Positions 7,570-16,414 of a DNA stretch of 64,000 bases are shown piece by piece. The notes beneath the pieces were generated by a model that had not been told where the DNA came from, made no database searches, and worked only from the letters and a program-made list of their open reading frames with translations. A program made the translations under genes and the position numbers. Every line of letters begins with the position of its first letter. The first letter of the stretch is position 1. Location: IMG/VR virus record IMGVR_UViG_3300045971_000577, positions 248,001 through 312,000 of that record; one strand, given 5' to 3'.

Positions 7570-7644
7570 TGGTGCGTCTGGAGGGAATCGAACCCTCGTC
7601 ATAGGATTTAGAATCCCGTACTCTAACCGCTGAGCTACAAACGC
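7570..7644 (-). tRNA. Amber suppressor tRNA (anticodon CTA)
   Basis: GCGTTTG/CAGACGC acceptor, ACCA; anticodon arm CGGGA-TTCTAAA-TCCTA; anticodon at 7609-7611. Confidence 0.85.
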
Positions 7645-10670: not shown

Positions 10671-10699
10671 AATATAAACGATCACAAACCGATTGTCAA
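10671..10699 (-). promoter_or_regulatory. Sigma70-type promoter
   Basis: TTGACA-N17-TATATT. Confidence 0.55.
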
Positions 10700-11706
10700 C
10701 CGTTTCTAATAGGAACAAGATTATCTCTAAATATTGCCCAACATTCTTCCCATGTCCATTTACTAGATGATGCCTTTACTACGTCTCGGTTTAGTTTCGA
10801 TGCGGCTAATATTGCGGTGTCTAAATCTTCCGACATGACTCCGTTCACTCCTTGATCGATAATATCTATCGGCCCGGGTACCGGATAACCTGCGACAGGA
10901 GTACCAATGCTCAGTGCCTCAATGATAACAATGCCAAAGGTATCCGTCTTACTCGGAAATGCAAATACATCTGCCCTAGCATAGCTATTTGCAAGCTCTG
11001 TCCCGGATTGATATCCAAGGAACTTGACATTCTTATATTTCGACTTTAATTCTTCAAGGTGTGGTCCGCCACCTACTATTTCGACATTGTATTTGTCCTG
11101 TAACACGCAAAGTGCTTCTAAGTTTTTTTCCTTCGAAACACGACCTACATATAATACAATAGGTGTCAATCCAATGTATGCAGATCGATGAGTAATAGTC
11201 GGTGCAAGAGTAGTTCTATCCACACCACGTGTCCAGGAATATATTTCACCTACAAACCCGTGTTCCTTTAGTTCTTTTACCATTGTCTCGGTTGTTGTAA
11301 GCACTTTTCCACTGTGTCTATGAAACCATCTCACATACATGTATGTGAGATTTTCCGGAATACCATACATAGTTTTTAGAAATTCAGGAAACTTTGTGTG
11401 GTACGAGGTATTATATCTTAGATTATGCCAACCACAATATAATTGTGCTGCCAGGCCTAGTGGACCCTCGGTAGCAATATGTATATGATCTGGATTTTCT
11501 TTCTTGATATATTTTGCAATGAATGGCCAGGATATCTTTACTTCAGGATACCCCGGACAAGAAAAATGTGGTAGCAAAGACGGATTAATACATGCTATAT
11601 CATATCCTTCTCGCTTGGCTAGAATCTCAATATTAGTAAAGGTAGTTACGACACCATTTACTTGATTTGGCAAGTTATCTGTTATTATCAATATCTTTTT
11701 TGTCAT
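10696..11706 (-). CDS. GT4-family glycosyltransferase (Agt-like candidate)
   Basis: PNQVNGVVTT, HIATEGPLG, YVGRVSKEKN, DTFGIVIIEA motifs. Confidence 0.9.
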   Translation of the reverse strand: MTKKILIITDNLPNQVNGVVTTFTNIEILAKREGYDIACINPSLLPHFSCPGYPEVKISWPFIAKYIKKENPDHIHIATEGPLGLAAQLYCGWHNLRYNTSYHTKFPEFLKTMYGIPENLTYMYVRWFHRHSGKVLTTTETMVKELKEHGFVGEIYSWTRGVDRTTLAPTITHRSAYIGLTPIVLYVGRVSKEKNLEALCVLQDKYNVEIVGGGPHLEELKSKYKNVKFLGYQSGTELANSYARADVFAFPSKTDTFGIVIIEALSIGTPVAGYPVPGPIDIIDQGVNGVMSEDLDTAILAASKLNRDVVKASSSKWTWEECWAIFRDNLVPIRNG

Positions 11707-12457
11707 ATATGTTACTTTCTTTCCAATGTATTAGTTCCCAGGAACCGTCGTGATGTTCGACCAATGCTGTTAGTGATTCTACCCAGTCTCCGTCATTCAT
11801 ATATATTATTCCATCTATGTCTTTTATTTCAGCATGATGAATATGGCCACATATAACTCCGTCAAATCCTCTTTTCTTGCAATAGTCTGCAATAGTCTTT
11901 TCAAATTTGAATATAAAATCTACGGACTTCTTAACTTTTATTTTCAGATATTTAGAGAGCGACCAATATCCAAATCCGAATTTATGTCTAATCCAGTTAA
12001 ATTTTGTATTCAATGACAGGATTAGATCGTATGCTCTATCACCTAAGAGGCTTAGCCACGGGGCAAGTCGAGTTATACCATCGAATAGATCTCCGTGGAC
12101 CACTAAGTAGTGTTTTCCGTCTAGCCCGATGTGTTCGGTTTGATTTTGAAATTCGATAGACCCGATGCTTATATGATAATTTAGCAAAGGGCGAATAAAC
12201 TCATCATGATTTCCAATTACATAAATTACTCTTGTCCCATGTTTTGCACATTTCAGCACTCGCCTAACAACATCGGAATGGCTTTGTTTCCATTTTAGTC
12301 TATTTTGTTGAATTTTCCAACCATCAATAATATCACCTACGAGATACAATGTCTCTGCTGTATTTGCCTTTAGAAAATTAGTCAGTTGCGATGCCTTACA
12401 TTCCTTAGATCCGAGATGAACATCGGAAATAAAAATAGATCGGTATTTCTTGATCAT
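11675..12457 (-). CDS. Metallophosphoesterase of the LpxH/YbbF (PlcP-like) family
   Basis: FISDVHLG, GDIIDGW, GNHDE, HGD, CGHIHH, NDGDWVES. Confidence 0.88.
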   Translation of the reverse strand: MIKKYRSIFISDVHLGSKECKASQLTNFLKANTAETLYLVGDIIDGWKIQQNRLKWKQSHSDVVRRVLKCAKHGTRVIYVIGNHDEFIRPLLNYHISIGSIEFQNQTEHIGLDGKHYLVVHGDLFDGITRLAPWLSLLGDRAYDLILSLNTKFNWIRHKFGFGYWSLSKYLKIKVKKSVDFIFKFEKTIADYCKKRGFDGVICGHIHHAEIKDIDGIIYMNDGDWVESLTALVEHHDGSWELIHWKESNIYDKKDIDNNR

Positions 12458-12556: not shown

Positions 12557-12952
12557 ATGTGTATGAAGAAACTATGGCTTATCTTAGTTATATTTGCCGC
12601 GGGATGCGCTTCGTTACCTGCGGATTTCGATAACAACGAATATGCAATAGCAAATCGAATCTTTACGTTGGCCGAAGTTTACAAGGTCGGTTGTTCCGAT
12701 CCCGAAAAGACAAAGTTGAATTTCACTGAGCTGTCAACACTATCGCTCGAGTTGGTAAACTACAGTGCAGATATTCCTAACAATCAGGATACAGTGAAGC
12801 TAATTGCACCAATGCACAAGATGATTTCCGATGCGAGCGTAAAGTTCAACACAGAAACCCATACCGCAACATATTGCAAACTGAAGTTAGACAATATTGA
12901 ACTTGCGGCAGGTATTATCAAACATGCTATCGCTCAGAGGAGAATGAAATGA
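12557..12952 (+). CDS. Putative lipoprotein
   Basis: Hydrophobic leader ending in lipobox-like FAAGC; GATAAATA upstream. Confidence 0.7.
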   Translation: MCMKKLWLILVIFAAGCASLPADFDNNEYAIANRIFTLAEVYKVGCSDPEKTKLNFTELSTLSLELVNYSADIPNNQDTVKLIAPMHKMISDASVKFNTETHTATYCKLKLDNIELAAGIIKHAIAQRRMK

Positions 12953-13203
12953 GTTTTCAAACTAACCTAAACGAACTGTTTGCATCCGGTAACCCATATG
13001 CGGTGGCAATAGCAGAGAAGATAAAGAATATCGACGATGCGTATGCTAATAAACTCATCACTGCGGATGAAGCTAAAGACCTTCTCAACGATATGAAAAC
13101 GGAAGAAGCATTAGTTGATCTTGCCAACAATTTGCAAATAAAACTCTATGTTCAGCAAACAATCGATAAGTTGATATTTCTTGTCGAGAATGTGATTTTT
13201 TAG
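12949..13203 (+). CDS. Hypothetical protein coupled to the lipoprotein
   Basis: ATGA overlap. Confidence 0.7.
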   Translation: MSFQTNLNELFASGNPYAVAIAEKIKNIDDAYANKLITADEAKDLLNDMKTEEALVDLANNLQIKLYVQQTIDKLIFLVENVIF

Positions 13204-13208
13204 TCATA

Positions 13209-13234
13209 AGAATAGGAACCGAAGTTCCTATTCT
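13209..13234. terminator. Hairpin terminator between convergent units
   Basis: Perfect 11-bp stem with a UUCG loop on the minus strand. Confidence 0.75.
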
Positions 13235-13500
13235 GGATTTTCTGTTGCCAGGCATTCCTGCCCCGTGGTTTACCGCTTTTTAGGCAGCAAGAGCCTCAGT
13301 GTAAAACGAATCATTTGCGTTTACTTTTTGTTTTCTTCGATTTACGGTCGTTGCTCACCGAGCGATAAGAAGCCTACTCAATACCCAGGCGATTCCGGAT
13401 CGGGCCCATAACTAAAACTTCACAAAAGGCTTAGTGGTGGACCCGGGGGGATTCGAACCCCCTTGTTGAATGTCTTTCTGTTTCCTACTTTACGCTGTTA
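13235..13500 (-). ncRNA. ssrA: Circularly permuted (two-piece) tmRNA
   Basis: Acceptor piece (T-arm, CGGGTCC-ACCA ending 13435) lies upstream of the 5' end GGGCCCG (13407); tag ANDSFYTEALAA* at 13280-13318; G3:U70; outer ends approximate. Confidence 0.85.
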
Positions 13501-13620
13501 TTTTCCTTAATTCTGATTCATAATAGTGTAGCAGACCTACAATAGTCATACGATCAAATCTGTTACCGTATCCTAAATGCCGTCTGTAGTAATCAATCTG
13601 TGATTCAATAAATGATTTAC

Positions 13621-14046
13621 TCATGATAGCTTCTGACTCTTTACGATACGTCTAAGTTCGAGTTCTGTGTCTCGCTTCTTTTCCGTAGCTCGTTTGTCGT
13701 ACTCTTTCTTACCCTTTGCAAGTCCAATCGAGAGTTTGTATTTACCTCTCGTTGAATAAATCTTCAACGGCACAAGAGTTAGTCCACGTTCCTTTGTCTT
13801 ACCGATGAGACGTTGGATTTCTTTCTTATGCAAAAGCAACTTACGCGAACGGGTCATATCGTGCTCGGAGCCACCGATGTTAGCGCCCACAAGCATGATG
13901 TTACCATCCATAACTACGCAGTGAGTTCCGGCGATTGAACAGCTCTTAGCCGCAATCGCCTTTACTTCCCAGCCTTCCAGCTTCATTCCACACTCGTATT
14001 GCTCGAGTATTTCATAATCAAAGAAGGCCTTCTGATTTGAAATCAT
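13621..14046 (-). CDS. smpB: SsrA-binding protein
   Basis: [52 protein letters not shown]. Confidence 0.95.
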
Positions 14047-14810
14047 AATTTCTCTTTACAGTTATCAAAATGCCATCTATTCATCGATTCTTTACAGTTA
14101 TCAAAATGCCATCTATTCATCGATCCTTCACCGCCCGACCGTTGGCAGTGCGGGCACTCAACAGTATTTCTTTTTTTACCAAGCCTTGACAATCCGATGT
14201 TAATATTATGTTCTGCCGAATTAGGTTTACCTTTTGCTGCTAAACTCATTTTTTCACGAGTCTCTTGGCTTACTACCTTATTTCGCATTTTCTGTTTTGT
14301 TTCTTCGGACATATTTTGTTTGGCTATGCTCATCTTATATCTCGCATCATCTGACATTGTTTTGCCGATGTTAGCCTCGCGCATTTTCTGTTTTGTTTCT
14401 TCTGTCCGAATTTTACCTGTATTTTTATCACTTATTCTTTGACGAACTTCTTTGGGCATAGATTTACTAGCTAATCCGATAATTTTCCGGGTTGCTGCAG
14501 AATGACTATGACCGGATGCTCCTTCGCCGCCATCGGTTCTGTTTTCTAAAATCCCTGTGCCTAAATCTTTTCGACCATACCACCGAATCATTCTGCGTTC
14601 GATTGCAAATGCACCGAGCTCAGTTAGATTACATTCTAAAATTACAATACGTGATATATCTACAGGAGTGTGTACTCCTGTATTATTCTTTTTATTCCTA
14701 TGATCAACATAAGCTCGATCTCCTGTGCCTTTTCCGATATAGTACGGTGTGCCAACATTAGCGGTTGCCGAGTTACGTGATCTTAAATAGGCATATACAT
14801 AATAATTCAT
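14043..14810 (-). CDS. GIY-YIG-like homing endonuclease with NUMOD3 repeats
   Basis: YYVYAYLR...PYYIGKG; repeated S.ET(K/R).KM. Confidence 0.88.
14053..14124. repeat. Exact 36-bp tandem duplication
   Basis: [12 protein letters not shown] encoded twice. Confidence 0.9.
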
Positions 14811-14876: not shown

Positions 14877-15545
14877 TTACCACATAAGGTCAAAGAAACC
14901 GCGTAACACCTTGTTAACGCTTCCTGTCTTTCCGCTGTTGTGATCCTTTACAACATCGTCTTGAAAACGGTATGTTTGTATCTTATCCCCGCGCATGCCA
15001 GAACCAACCTGTTCTTTGCGGCTTGAATCTAGCGCGAACTTGTGCTCTCTATGTGCGTGTGCGTTTAGTGCCTCTAGCAGGGCTTGCTTCGCCTGATCTT
15101 GGCTATTTTGCCTGGATCGACACTGTGCCGTGGCAGTTTGGCCTGTAGGCAAATACGTTATACGACACGAATTTTGATGTTTGTTGCGGTGTTGGCCGCC
15201 TGCGCCAGTACCGCTGTACCATTCTATTCTAAAATCCGAGTCTTTGAATTCGATATTACGCAATTCGGGATCAGTGATCGCAACTGTTACGGTGCTGGTA
15301 TGAACTCTGCCCTTGCGCTCGGTTGGTGGAATACGCTGTATGCGGTGCCCACCTGCTTCTTTCTCTAACTGTGATAAGTCTGCACCCTCAACTTCTATGA
15401 AAAGTTCTCCGGGGAGATTCCTTATCACGCGATTGATTCAGCCAACTCTGTCAAAGTGGCGTTGGTATGCTGCTGCAAGATCTACAGTGAATAGCTTGCT
15501 GTCTTCTCCGCCCTCAGCTGCGCGTATTTCAATAATTCTTTTCAC
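14877..15545 (-). CDS. prfA: RF1-type class I release factor interrupted by an in-frame TGA (15438-15440)
   Basis: GGAGA RBS + GTG; IIEIRAAEGGEDSKLF, HRIQRIPPTERKGRVHTS (PxT), GAGGQH (GGQ), IQTYRF. Confidence 0.85.
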
Positions 15546-16186: not shown

Positions 16187-16192
16187 AAGGTT

Positions 16193-16414
16193 TGATTACT
16201 CTATAGTCAGGGTTCTGTGCTCTTACGAGTGACAATCCCTGCTCTATTCAGCCCTGAGCTTCCTCTACCATTATAGCAGCGATTGTCCAAGTAATCAAAA
16301 TTTGGTTGAGTTGCTACCAGATGGTGATCAAACCATCCTAGCTTCATTCATTCTCTAAATGCAGTTAAAGAGCCCGACTAGCTTACTAACGTCATTGTTG
16401 ATCAATAGCAACTC
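16193..16414 (-). ncRNA. Candidate two-domain structured RNA
   Basis: GAGTTGCTA/TAGCAACTC and GATTACT/AGTAATC closing stems; TCAGGG/CCCTGA. Confidence 0.45.

What the first reader, a model, noticed from the sequence alone, without database searches (positions are those of the whole stretch)
13209..14046. Circularly permuted two-piece tmRNA with cognate smpB in a phage
Seen in sequence: the T-arm/ACCA piece comes before the GGGCCCG 5' piece, separated by a 27-nt spacer. The tag reads ANDSFYTEALAA. smpB lies directly upstream and a UUCG terminator downstream. Established: permuted tmRNAs occur in Alphaproteobacteria, some marine cyanobacteria and a betaproteobacterial lineage that includes Dechloromonas; the phage tmRNAs I know are one-piece. 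Inference: this marks the host lineage and gives the phage its own ribosome-rescue unit.
Basis: partly seen in the sequence, partly recalled or inferred. Interest (0 to 1): 0.7.

Follow-up and report, generated by a model that had tools for sequence, protein, structure and literature searches.

The report
Huge phage's own two-piece tmRNA
A 369-kb freshwater phage carries its own ribosome-rescue pair, an SmpB gene followed by a circularly permuted (two-piece) tmRNA gene; it is real and conserved across a clade of related huge phages, but both huge-phage tmRNA/SmpB and two-piece phage tmRNAs have been described before.

Summary
ARAGORN calls a permuted tmRNA with the tag ANDSFYTEALAA. Rfam's general permuted model scores 89.6 bits (cut-off 47) and its betaproteobacterial model 87.7 bits (cut-off 84). 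smpB lies just upstream.

The window is part of a complete 369-kb tailed-phage genome with 48 tRNAs. More than 100 metagenomic SmpB clusters (65-94% identical) form one phage clade. In 11 relatives checked, smpB comes with a beta-type permuted tmRNA, usually directly downstream. Across ten of these tmRNAs:
- The inter-piece acceptor stem, T stem, P2 helices and 3' hairpin covary.
- G3:U70 and the ACCA end never change.
- The spacer varies from 25 to 113 nt.

This indicates a working two-piece tmRNA with a cognate SmpB.

Two-piece tmRNAs in phages (Buchholz 2022) and tmRNA plus SmpB in huge phages (Al-Shayeb 2020) are published. The host-lineage inference is not supported: in trees, the phage SmpB and tmRNA each form their own branch, not nested in any bacterial group.

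Side findings may be more novel:
- An RF1-like gene lacking domain 1 has a strictly conserved in-frame TGA.
- Relatives carry RNase P-like RNAs.

Verdict: a new member of a known kind, of moderate interest.

The parts
13209..13535 (-). Permuted (two-piece) tmRNA gene, ssrA, as one precursor
   Evidence: Rfam RF01850 87.7 bits and RF04321 89.6 bits. ARAGORN tmRNA* 13189-13528.
13435..13496 (-). Acceptor piece: 5' strands of the P2 helices, T arm (13446-13462), 3' acceptor strand (13439-13445), A73 and an encoded CCA (13435-13438)
   Evidence: The true 5' end is not known.
13408..13434 (-). 27-nt intervening spacer, predicted to be cut out; it folds as a small hairpin of its own
   Evidence: Spacer length is 25-113 nt and the sequence is not conserved in relatives.
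13209..13407 (-). Coding piece: 5' acceptor strand GGGCCCG (13401-13407), D-loop analogue, 3' strands of P2, tag frame and 3' hairpin
13280..13318 (-). Tag reading frame: resume codon GCA, peptide ANDSFYTEALAA, stop UAA
   Evidence: ARAGORN coding part 211-249 of the gene; alignment.
13209..13234 (.). 11-bp hairpin with a UUCG loop. It is the conserved 3' terminal hairpin of the tmRNA and a terminator-like site for the convergent plus-strand ORF.
   Evidence: It covaries in 10 phage tmRNAs and is shared with bacterial beta-type tmRNAs.
13621..14046 (-). smpB (141 aa), full length with the C-terminal tail (GKKEYDKR...RRIVK); a clade-specific 7-residue deletion
   Evidence: Pfam 5.3e-46; NCBIfam 160 bits over a cut-off of 130; alignment.
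13490..13624 (-). 44-codon ORF in a window-specific insert of about 95 nt between smpB and the tmRNA; probably not a gene. A weak sigma-70-like site (13549 to 13520) lies in it.
   Evidence: No Pfam hit.
14043..14810 (-). Homing-endonuclease-like gene with NUMOD3 repeats (GIY-YIG-like N-terminus read by eye), inserted between the RF1-like gene and smpB. A strong sigma-70-like site (14893 to 14865) lies upstream.
   Evidence: Pfam NUMOD3 1e-08. Absent at this site in L027, where the RF1-like gene abuts smpB. Promoter scan.
14877..15545 (-). RF1-like release-factor gene without domain 1 (PPT and GGQ motifs), with an in-frame TGA at 15438-15440
   Evidence: The same TGA is present in L027, G001 and G002.

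Best explanation
The locus is a phage-encoded trans-translation unit: smpB followed by a circularly permuted ssrA of the betaproteobacterial architecture.

Inferred mechanism:
1. The RNA is transcribed as one precursor, either from the strong promoter-like site upstream of the endonuclease gene and smpB, or from a weak site just before the RNA.
2. The upstream acceptor piece (P2 strands, T arm, CGGGUCC-ACCA) pairs with the downstream coding piece (GGGCCCG onward). This makes a tRNA-Ala-like domain with G3:U70 and A73.
3. The 27-nt loop joining CCA to G1 must be cut to free the 3'-OH for charging. RNase P would cut at G1 and 3' trimming would run back to the encoded CCA. The mature RNA is therefore two base-paired pieces.
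4. Host AlaRS charges it, phage SmpB binds the tRNA-like domain, and the complex enters ribosomes stalled at mRNA 3' ends.
5. Translation resumes at GCA and adds ANDSFYTEALAA, an ALAA-ended degron. The ribosome then terminates at UAA.

The likely benefit is keeping ribosomes free during infection by a phage that also brings 48 tRNAs and a release-factor-like protein.

Shown here: gene identity, architecture, conservation and covariation. Inferred: processing, charging, tagging and the benefit to the phage.
For: - **Detection.** Two independent detectors agree.
- **SmpB.** It passes the curated cut-offs and keeps its C-terminal tail.
- **Clade.** The SmpB belongs to a large phage clade: more than 100 clusters at 65-94% identity, on contigs up to 361 kb. 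The clade is monophyletic at 98-100% SH-aLRT.
- **Linkage.** All 11 relatives checked carry a beta-type permuted tmRNA. It sits immediately after smpB in L027, L029, L030, L034/35, L037 and L040/41. It lies 0.4 kb away in L039, 1.2 kb away in L031 and 14 kb away in G001.
- **Acceptor stem.** Each of 10 phage tmRNAs has exactly one 7/7 partner for the 3' acceptor strand. Positions 4-7 covary with 2-3 pair types and are paired in 100% of sequences. G1-C72, G2-C71, G3:U70, A73 and CCA are invariant.
- **Other helices.** The T stem, three P2 segments and the 3' hairpin also covary, with up to 5 pair types per pair.
- **Spacer.** Its length (25-113 nt) and sequence are free to vary, as expected for a discarded segment.
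- **Tags.** Tags in relatives keep the AND...ALAA form.
- **Fold.** The MFE fold recovers the T arm, the acceptor stem and a spacer hairpin; z = -2.56.
- **Phage identity.** 369 kb with direct terminal repeats; tail sheath 1.7e-76.
Against: - There is no expression or processing data. The three RNA libraries that share words with the gene hold only conserved parts of relatives, and one contig spans both pieces with a 95-nt spacer, which could be precursor or DNA.
- The beta_tmRNA score is only just over its cut-off (87.7 against 84). The window's RNA also lacks a ~19-nt hairpin that 7 of 10 clade members have before the tag.
- The pseudoknot upstream of the resume codon was not checked.
- No strong promoter lies directly before the RNA.
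- SmpB binding to the RNA could not be modelled.
Confidence: 0.85

Rival explanations
1. The cassette works as described, but its selective value is counter-defence. It would rescue ribosomes stalled by host abortive-infection nucleases that cut mRNAs or tRNAs, rather than providing general housekeeping. This is not exclusive of the best explanation.
For: The cassette sits inside a very large tRNA island (34 tRNAs in the window, 48 in the genome) and next to a release-factor-like gene. That fits a toolkit which replaces damaged translation parts. This is inference only.
Against: Nothing in the data separates this from general maintenance of translation. No defence or anti-defence gene was identified beside the cassette.
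Confidence: 0.2
2. The RNA acts as a decoy or regulator rather than a tagger. It would bind host SmpB or ribosomes, or sense stalled ribosomes to time lysis, as proposed for the tRNA-like-domain-only RNA of mycobacteriophage DS6A.
For: Hudson et al. 2014 (PMC4131195) describe the DS6A form and its inhibitory effect. Al-Shayeb et al. 2020 mention a sensing role for tmRNA.
Against: This RNA keeps a complete tag frame with a conserved resume context and an ALAA end in the window and most relatives. The phage also brings its own full-length SmpB.
Confidence: 0.06
3. The locus is a host fragment or an assembly chimera: a bacterial smpB-ssrA region joined to phage DNA, or attachment-site debris.
For: ssrA is a common integration site, and several IMG/VR 'viral' contigs found here carry E. 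coli-type smpB-ssrA that looks like host flank (L014-L021).
Against: - The region lies in the middle of a complete genome with terminal repeats, among phage genes.
- An independent pond metagenome holds it at 97% of sampled words.
- The same arrangement recurs in many related phage contigs.
- SmpB is at most 54% identical to any bacterial one found.
- GC is 45% against about 60% at most bacterial beta-type loci.
Confidence: 0.02

Closest known systems
Betaproteobacterial two-piece tmRNA (Rfam RF01850; for example Dechloromonas, Rhodocyclaceae, extra copies in Cupriavidus sp. amp6)
   Same: - Gene order: acceptor piece first, then a short spacer (24-42 nt in bacteria, 27 nt here), then the coding piece.
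- Gene length of about 330 nt, with the tag starting near position 207-221.
- A 3' UUCG hairpin and a tag of the form AND...F/Y-ALAA.
   Different: - It scores 87.7 bits against 169-296 bits for bacterial members.
- Phage and bacterial sequences fall on opposite sides of one branch, 92/99 support.
- CCA is fully encoded in all phage copies but in only one of the three bacterial copies aligned.
- It is phage-borne and linked to smpB.
- GC is 45% against about 60%, apart from one 40%-GC bacterium.
Two-piece tmRNAs of marine phages (OM43 phage Melnitz, pelagimyophages, cyanophages; Buchholz et al. 2022, PMC9004378)
   Same: A circularly permuted ssrA carried by a tailed phage from an aquatic habitat. 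ARAGORN flags it in the same way.
   Different: Those described in detail are of the alpha or cyano type. Some carry a glutamine riboswitch, and the genomes are far smaller. The passages I read do not mention a linked phage smpB. Here the RNA is beta type, next to smpB, in a 369-kb freshwater phage.
tmRNA plus SmpB of huge phages (Al-Shayeb et al. 2020, PMC7162821; Lak phages)
   Same: A phage of more than 200 kb with many tRNAs, release factors, tmRNA and SmpB.
   Different: In the passages I read, that paper does not say whether its tmRNAs are permuted. Lak phage SmpB is only 39.6% identical. No record in the GenBank phage collection has an SmpB above 60% identity.
Caulobacter two-piece tmRNA (Keiler, Shapiro and Williams 2000, as cited in PMC11915505 and PMC9004378)
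   Same: The functional model is the same: a precursor cut by tRNA-processing enzymes into two base-paired RNAs that tag proteins.
   Different: It is alpha type, an independent permutation lineage, and chromosomal.
One-piece tmRNAs of mycobacteriophages (Bxz1 group) and Bacillus phage G (Hudson et al. 2014, PMC4131195)
   Same: A phage-encoded ssrA.
   Different: These have the standard gene order, and no phage smpB is reported there.

Membership tests
Permuted (two-piece) tmRNA | The 3' half of the tRNA-like domain (T arm, 3' acceptor strand, ACCA) is encoded upstream of the 5' acceptor strand and the tag frame | tested here: met
   ACCA ends at 13435 and G1 is at 13407 on the minus strand.
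Permuted (two-piece) tmRNA | A 7-bp acceptor stem forms between the two pieces, with the alanine identity pair G3:U70 and discriminator A73 | tested here: met
   GGGCCCG pairs with CGGGUCC-A. In 10 phage homologues all 7 pairs form in 100% of sequences, positions 4-7 covary, and G3:U70 is invariant.
Permuted (two-piece) tmRNA | Score over the curated threshold of the Rfam permuted model RF04321 | tested here: met
   89.6 bits against 47.
Permuted (two-piece) tmRNA | A tag frame that starts at an Ala resume codon and ends in a hydrophobic degron followed by a stop | tested here: met
   GCA...GCU GCC UAA, giving ANDSFYTEALAA. The pre-resume context AAGUAAAC is conserved in relatives.
Permuted (two-piece) tmRNA | The precursor is cleaved into two RNAs and the spacer is discarded | not testable with these tools
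   The only support is indirect. The spacer is free to vary between 25 and 113 nt, and a free CCA end is chemically required for charging. The RNA libraries were uninformative.
Permuted (two-piece) tmRNA | Alanylation and tagging activity | not testable with these tools
   Needs experiments.
Beta-type two-piece tmRNA (RF01850) | Best-scoring model of the tmRNA clan, and over its gathering score | tested here: met
   87.7 against 84 bits, and it is the model kept after clan competition. The pass is marginal: relatives score 47-82.5 bits, below the cut-off.
Beta-type two-piece tmRNA (RF01850) | Nested within the bacterial beta-type lineage, that is, recently derived from it | tested here: not met
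   Phage and bacterial sequences split 92/99 with neither nested in the other.
Beta-type two-piece tmRNA (RF01850) | A pseudoknot upstream of the tag frame | not tested
   Covariance models and RNAalifold do not model pseudoknots. A hairpin after P2 (CGGU...ACCG) is present and covaries.
SmpB (PF01668, TIGR00086) | Full-length match over the curated cut-offs | tested here: met
   Pfam 156.5 bits against 27. NCBIfam NF003843 160.2 bits against 130 and TIGR00086 147.2 bits against 119.1.
SmpB (PF01668, TIGR00086) | A basic C-terminal tail with the GKK...DKR motif and a distal hydrophobic pair | tested here: met
   GKKEYDKR...RRIVK aligns with the E. coli-type GKKEHDKR...ARIMK. That these residues are functionally important rests on my own knowledge of SmpB work.
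SmpB (PF01668, TIGR00086) | Binds the tRNA-like domain of the cognate tmRNA | not testable with these tools
   Complex prediction does not fold protein-RNA jobs.
Peptide chain release factor 1 (prfA), for the neighbouring gene | Equivalog-level match with domains 1-4 in an uninterrupted frame | tested here: not met
   143-145 bits against cut-offs of 400-423. Only RF1 residues from about 105 to 340 are present, and there is an in-frame TGA. It is RF1-like, not RF1.

The most novel reading that the evidence does not exclude
The smpB-tmRNA pair may be one part of a clade-wide phage toolkit for translation termination, ribosome rescue and RNA processing. The other parts would be:
- A domain-1-less RF1-like factor whose synthesis needs read-through of a strictly conserved in-frame UGA. 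This would couple its production to the state of host UGA termination.
- In relatives, a phage RNase P-like RNA that could itself cut the two-piece precursor and the tRNA arrays.

A second reading that the data do not exclude concerns origin. Huge phages may be the vehicle, or even the source, of the beta-type permuted ssrA. That gene is patchy in Betaproteobacteria (4 of 151 sampled genomes) and occurs as two extra copies beside a standard tmRNA in Cupriavidus sp. amp6.
Probability: 0.15. Interest if true: 0.7.

Novelty: new member of a known kind. Interest (0 to 1): 0.35.

Why it matters
It shows that a widespread clade of freshwater huge phages (pond, lake, river and wastewater) has long kept a linked smpB and two-piece ssrA under purifying selection. 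These phages therefore probably run their own trans-translation, not just borrow the host's.

It gives a natural set of covarying two-piece tmRNAs outside bacteria. It also warns that tmRNA type is a poor host marker.

The linked RF1-like gene with its fixed in-frame UGA, and the phage RNase P-like RNAs, are concrete and testable leads on how huge phages take over translation.

Tried and rejected
- **GenBank phage collection.** DNA search of 12900-14400 found no match. Protein search with SmpB found only hits below 60% identity: Lak phages, gut contigs and host-like fragments.
- **RNA evidence.** Two run searches and one read-laying run were used. DNA runs from ponds hold the locus. The three RNA-labelled runs hold only short conserved parts of relatives, so nothing can be said about transcription or processing.
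- **Complex prediction.** A job with SmpB plus the two RNA pieces was accepted but not folded, because the tool gives no verdict for protein-RNA complexes. It is not evidence either way.
- **Stop-codon recoding.** I considered whether the genome uses a recoded stop, which would explain the CUA tRNA and the TGA in the RF1-like gene. This is rejected: the longest ORFs are unchanged under recoding, and same-frame ORF fusions are not enriched for any stop (TGA 12, TAG 8, TAA 14).
- **Host from SmpB similarity.** The best bacterial hits are Betaproteobacteria at 46-54% identity, but the scan patterns bias that list. Trees place the phage clade outside the named Betaproteobacteria with weak support, and the 30 extra Pseudomonadota rows carry no taxon labels. 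The host is left unresolved.
- **Cupriavidus flanks.** ORFs beside the permuted copy in L147 have no Pfam hits, so a mobile-element context could not be shown.
- **Literature gaps.** Sharkady and Williams 2004 (PMC516066) is not held. The supplements of the 2025 tmRNA database paper gave no breakdown of phage forms.
- **The 44-codon ORF.** The ORF between smpB and the tmRNA lies in a window-specific insert and is absent in relatives. I treat it as doubtful.

Full report
**1.

On the minus strand, ARAGORN calls a permuted tmRNA (tmRNA*) at 13189-13528 with the tag ANDSFYTEALAA. Rfam's general permuted model RF04321 matches 13280-13496 at 89.6 bits (cut-off 47). The betaproteobacterial two-piece model RF01850 matches 13209-13535 at 87.7 bits (cut-off 84), and it is the model kept after competition within the tmRNA clan.

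Read directly from the sequence:
- The T arm is 13446-13462.
- The 3' acceptor strand CGGGUCC, A73 and CCA end at 13435.
- A spacer of exactly 27 nt follows (13408-13434).
- The 5' strand GGGCCCG is 13401-13407. It is the only perfect partner within 260 nt.
- The stem has G3:U70, the alanine identity pair.
- The tag frame is 13280-13318.
- An 11-bp UUCG hairpin at 13209-13234 closes the gene.

smpB (141 aa, 13621-14046) passes the Pfam and NCBIfam cut-offs.

**2. It is a phage**

The window is positions 248001-312000 of a 369,145-bp IMG/VR record with direct terminal repeats, rated complete. GC is 44.9%. The genome has 48 tRNAs and this single tmRNA. The window encodes a tail sheath (1.7e-76) and tail-fibre and virion proteins. 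DNA runs that hold the locus come from pond, wastewater, river and lake metagenomes.

**3. Comparative evidence that the RNA is functional**

The SmpB belongs to a large metagenomic clade of 140-141-aa proteins. There are more than 100 clusters at 65-94% identity, on contigs up to 361 kb. The clade is monophyletic in trees at 98-100% SH-aLRT.

Every clade relative I could read carries a permuted tmRNA whose best clan model is the beta type:
- It sits immediately after smpB in L027, L029, L030, L034/35, L037 and L040/41.
- It lies 0.4 kb away in L039, 1.2 kb away in L031, and 14 kb away in the complete 385-kb relative G001.

In all ten distinct phage tmRNAs there is exactly one 7/7 partner for the 3' acceptor strand. 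The spacer ranges from 25 to 113 nt with no sequence conservation.

I aligned the two pieces separately and folded them with RNAalifold:
- All acceptor pairs and all T-stem pairs form in 100% of sequences.
- Acceptor positions 4-7 show 2-3 pair types, while G1-C72, G2-C71 and G3:U70 are invariant.
- The three P2 segments that hold the two pieces together, and the 3' hairpin, also covary, with up to 5 pair types per pair.

This is the pattern expected of an RNA selected to fold as a two-piece tmRNA, with a discarded linker. Tags in relatives are ANDSQFALAA, ANDESYALAA, ANDETPYALAA and some long variants. The single-sequence fold recovers the T arm, the acceptor stem and a small spacer hairpin (z = -2.56).

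**4. SmpB**

Compared with beta- and gamma-proteobacterial SmpBs, the phage clade has a 7-residue deletion and a CSIAGxHC motif. It keeps the C-terminal tail, GKKEYDKR...RRIVK. That this tail is needed for trans-translation is my own knowledge of the family.

**5. Relation to bacterial two-piece tmRNAs, and the host question**

Dechloromonas sp. CZR5 and Cupriavidus sp. amp6 carry beta-type permuted genes with the tags ANDEQFAIAA, ANDERFALAA and ANDEKFALAA. These share with the phage gene the overall length, the spacer size, the tag position and the 3' UUCG hairpin.

Of 151 evenly sampled genomes of the GTDB order that holds the Betaproteobacteria, only 4 pass the RF01850 cut-off, at 169-296 bits. 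By SmpB similarity these are relatives of Rhodocyclaceae and Dechloromonas, plus one unplaced genome of 2.0 Mb whose tmRNA locus is about 40% GC. Cupriavidus sp. amp6 has a standard tmRNA as well as two permuted copies.

The trees do not tie the phage to any of these:
- In a tmRNA tree, the ten phage and six bacterial sequences fall on opposite sides of one branch (92/99), with neither nested in the other.
- The closest bacterial SmpBs found are betaproteobacterial at 46-54% identity, but the scan patterns bias that list.
- In SmpB trees the phage clade sits outside the named Betaproteobacteria with weak support.

So the RNA has the beta architecture and the pair is broadly proteobacterial. 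The exchange was old, its direction is unknown, and the tmRNA does not identify the host. Melnitz is a published case of mismatch between phage tmRNA type and host (PMC9004378). The AND...ALAA tag form fits a beta- or gamma-proteobacterial proteolysis system; this is inference.

**6. Neighbourhood**

Reading along the minus strand, the order is: RF1-like gene (14877-15545), an endonuclease-like gene with NUMOD3 repeats (14043-14810), smpB, a window-specific insert of about 95 nt with a doubtful 44-codon ORF, and the tmRNA.
- In L027 the RF1-like gene abuts smpB with no endonuclease gene between them. In G001 the RF1-like gene lies next to the tmRNA.
- A strong sigma-70-like site (TTGACC-17-TATAAT, 14893 to 14865) precedes the endonuclease gene. 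Only a weak one (13549 to 13520) precedes the RNA. Co-transcription with smpB is therefore plausible but not shown.

**7. Mechanism**

The steps are as given in the best explanation: one precursor; folding of the tRNA-like domain across the two pieces; cleavage at G1 by RNase P and 3' trimming to the encoded CCA; alanylation through G3:U70; SmpB binding; entry into stalled ribosomes; tagging with ANDSFYTEALAA; and termination at UAA.

Cleavage after CCA is required by chemistry, because a 3'-OH is needed for charging. A two-piece mature form is therefore the expected outcome even without RNA data.

**8. What is known already**

- Hudson et al. 2014 listed only one-piece phage tmRNAs (PMC4131195).
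- Buchholz et al. 2022 found 53 of 133 unique phage tmRNAs to be two-piece, mostly in marine and aquatic phages. [quoted passage not shown]
- Al-Shayeb et al. 2020 reported tmRNAs, SmpB and RF1/RF2 in huge phages (PMC7162821).
- The 2025 tmRNA database counts 79 unique phage sequences (PMC11915505).
- PHROGs already has families for this SmpB and for the RF-like protein.

The finding is therefore a new member of a known kind: a beta-type two-piece tmRNA tightly linked to smpB in a freshwater huge-phage clade. I found no paper describing this clade or this linkage. No GenBank phage record has a close SmpB.

**9. Side observations**

- **RF1-like gene.** It lacks domain 1, keeps the PPT and GGQ motifs, and has an in-frame GGC-TGA. 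By my reading of the RF1 sequence, the TGA sits where RF1 and RF2 have a conserved Trp. The same TGA is at the same place in L027, G001 and the distant 524-kb phage G002. The flanking codons carry synonymous changes and both sides are conserved at the protein level. The genome as a whole uses the standard code, and there is no UCA tRNA.
- **RNase P-like RNAs.** G001 (86 bits) and L027 (63.6 bits) carry RNase P class-A-like RNAs with the conserved core motifs. The window has only a 111-nt miniature (31.8 bits).

**10. Verdict**

The host inference is not supported, and the claim of novelty against other phage tmRNAs is outdated. Interest is moderate (0.35). The linked RF1-like gene and the RNase P-like RNAs deserve their own follow-up.

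Noticed in passing
window 14877-15545 (-), TGA at 15438-15440; also L027:2302-2982, L178 (G001) and L177 (G002): An RF1-like release-factor gene of about 222 codons lacks domain 1 and keeps the PPT and GGQ motifs. It has a strictly conserved in-frame GGC-TGA where, by my reading, RF1 and RF2 have a conserved Trp. The TGA is present in four huge phages, including a distant 524-kb one, with synonymous changes around it. The genome otherwise uses the standard code and has no UCA tRNA. This looks like programmed UGA read-through. I found no description of it in the stop-codon-recoding preprint I read.
   Followed up: partly
window 16188-16298 (-); L027:1838-2195; L173 (G001:C1:158529-158864): Relatives carry RNase P class-A-like RNAs: 86 bits in G001 and 63.6 bits in L027 (cut-off 100), with P1-P4 and the conserved core motifs. 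The window keeps only a 111-nt miniature (31.8 bits, E 4e-7) with the whole middle deleted, and it overlaps a sigma-70-like site. One literature search found no report of a phage-encoded RNase P RNA.
   Followed up: partly
window 7570-7644 (-): A tRNA with anticodon CUA (amber suppressor, labelled tRNA-Pyl by ARAGORN) is the best-scoring tRNA in the window at 66.9 bits. The genome shows no sign of TAG recoding. A CUA tRNA also occurs in the unrelated viral locus L065.
   Followed up: partly
window 14053-14128: A 36-nt tandem duplication (2.1 copies, 97% match) sits at the 3' end of the endonuclease gene, right before the smpB start. It repeats the peptide [11 protein letters not shown].
   Followed up: no
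window 248-29062 (-): 34 tRNA genes, all on the minus strand, lie in the first 29 kb of the window (48 in the genome). smpB, the tmRNA and the RF1-like gene are embedded in this island.
   Followed up: no
L002:5866-6284 (G001, the 385-kb relative): A GOLLD RNA (212 bits, cut-off 150) lies about 2.5 kb from smpB among tRNA genes in the closest complete relative. None reached the cut-off in the window.
   Followed up: no
L147, L151 and L167 (Cupriavidus sp. amp6, G007): This bacterium has a standard one-piece tmRNA (216 bits, tag ANDERYALAA) plus two beta-type permuted copies (tags ANDERFALAA and ANDEKFALAA). The extra copies may sit on mobile elements, but ORFs flanking L147 had no Pfam hits.
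   Followed up: partly
L023 (G002, a 524-kb phage): A different huge phage carries an alpha-type permuted tmRNA (121 bits on RF04321, tag ANDNVFAMAA) 147 kb from its smpB. Two-piece tmRNAs of more than one type therefore occur in huge phages.
   Followed up: partly
window 10696-12457 (-): A family-4 glycosyltransferase (10696-11706) and a calcineurin-like metallophosphoesterase (11675-12457) lie just beyond the tmRNA end of the cassette. The convergent plus-strand ORFs 12557-13203 between them and the tmRNA have no significant family match.
   Followed up: no
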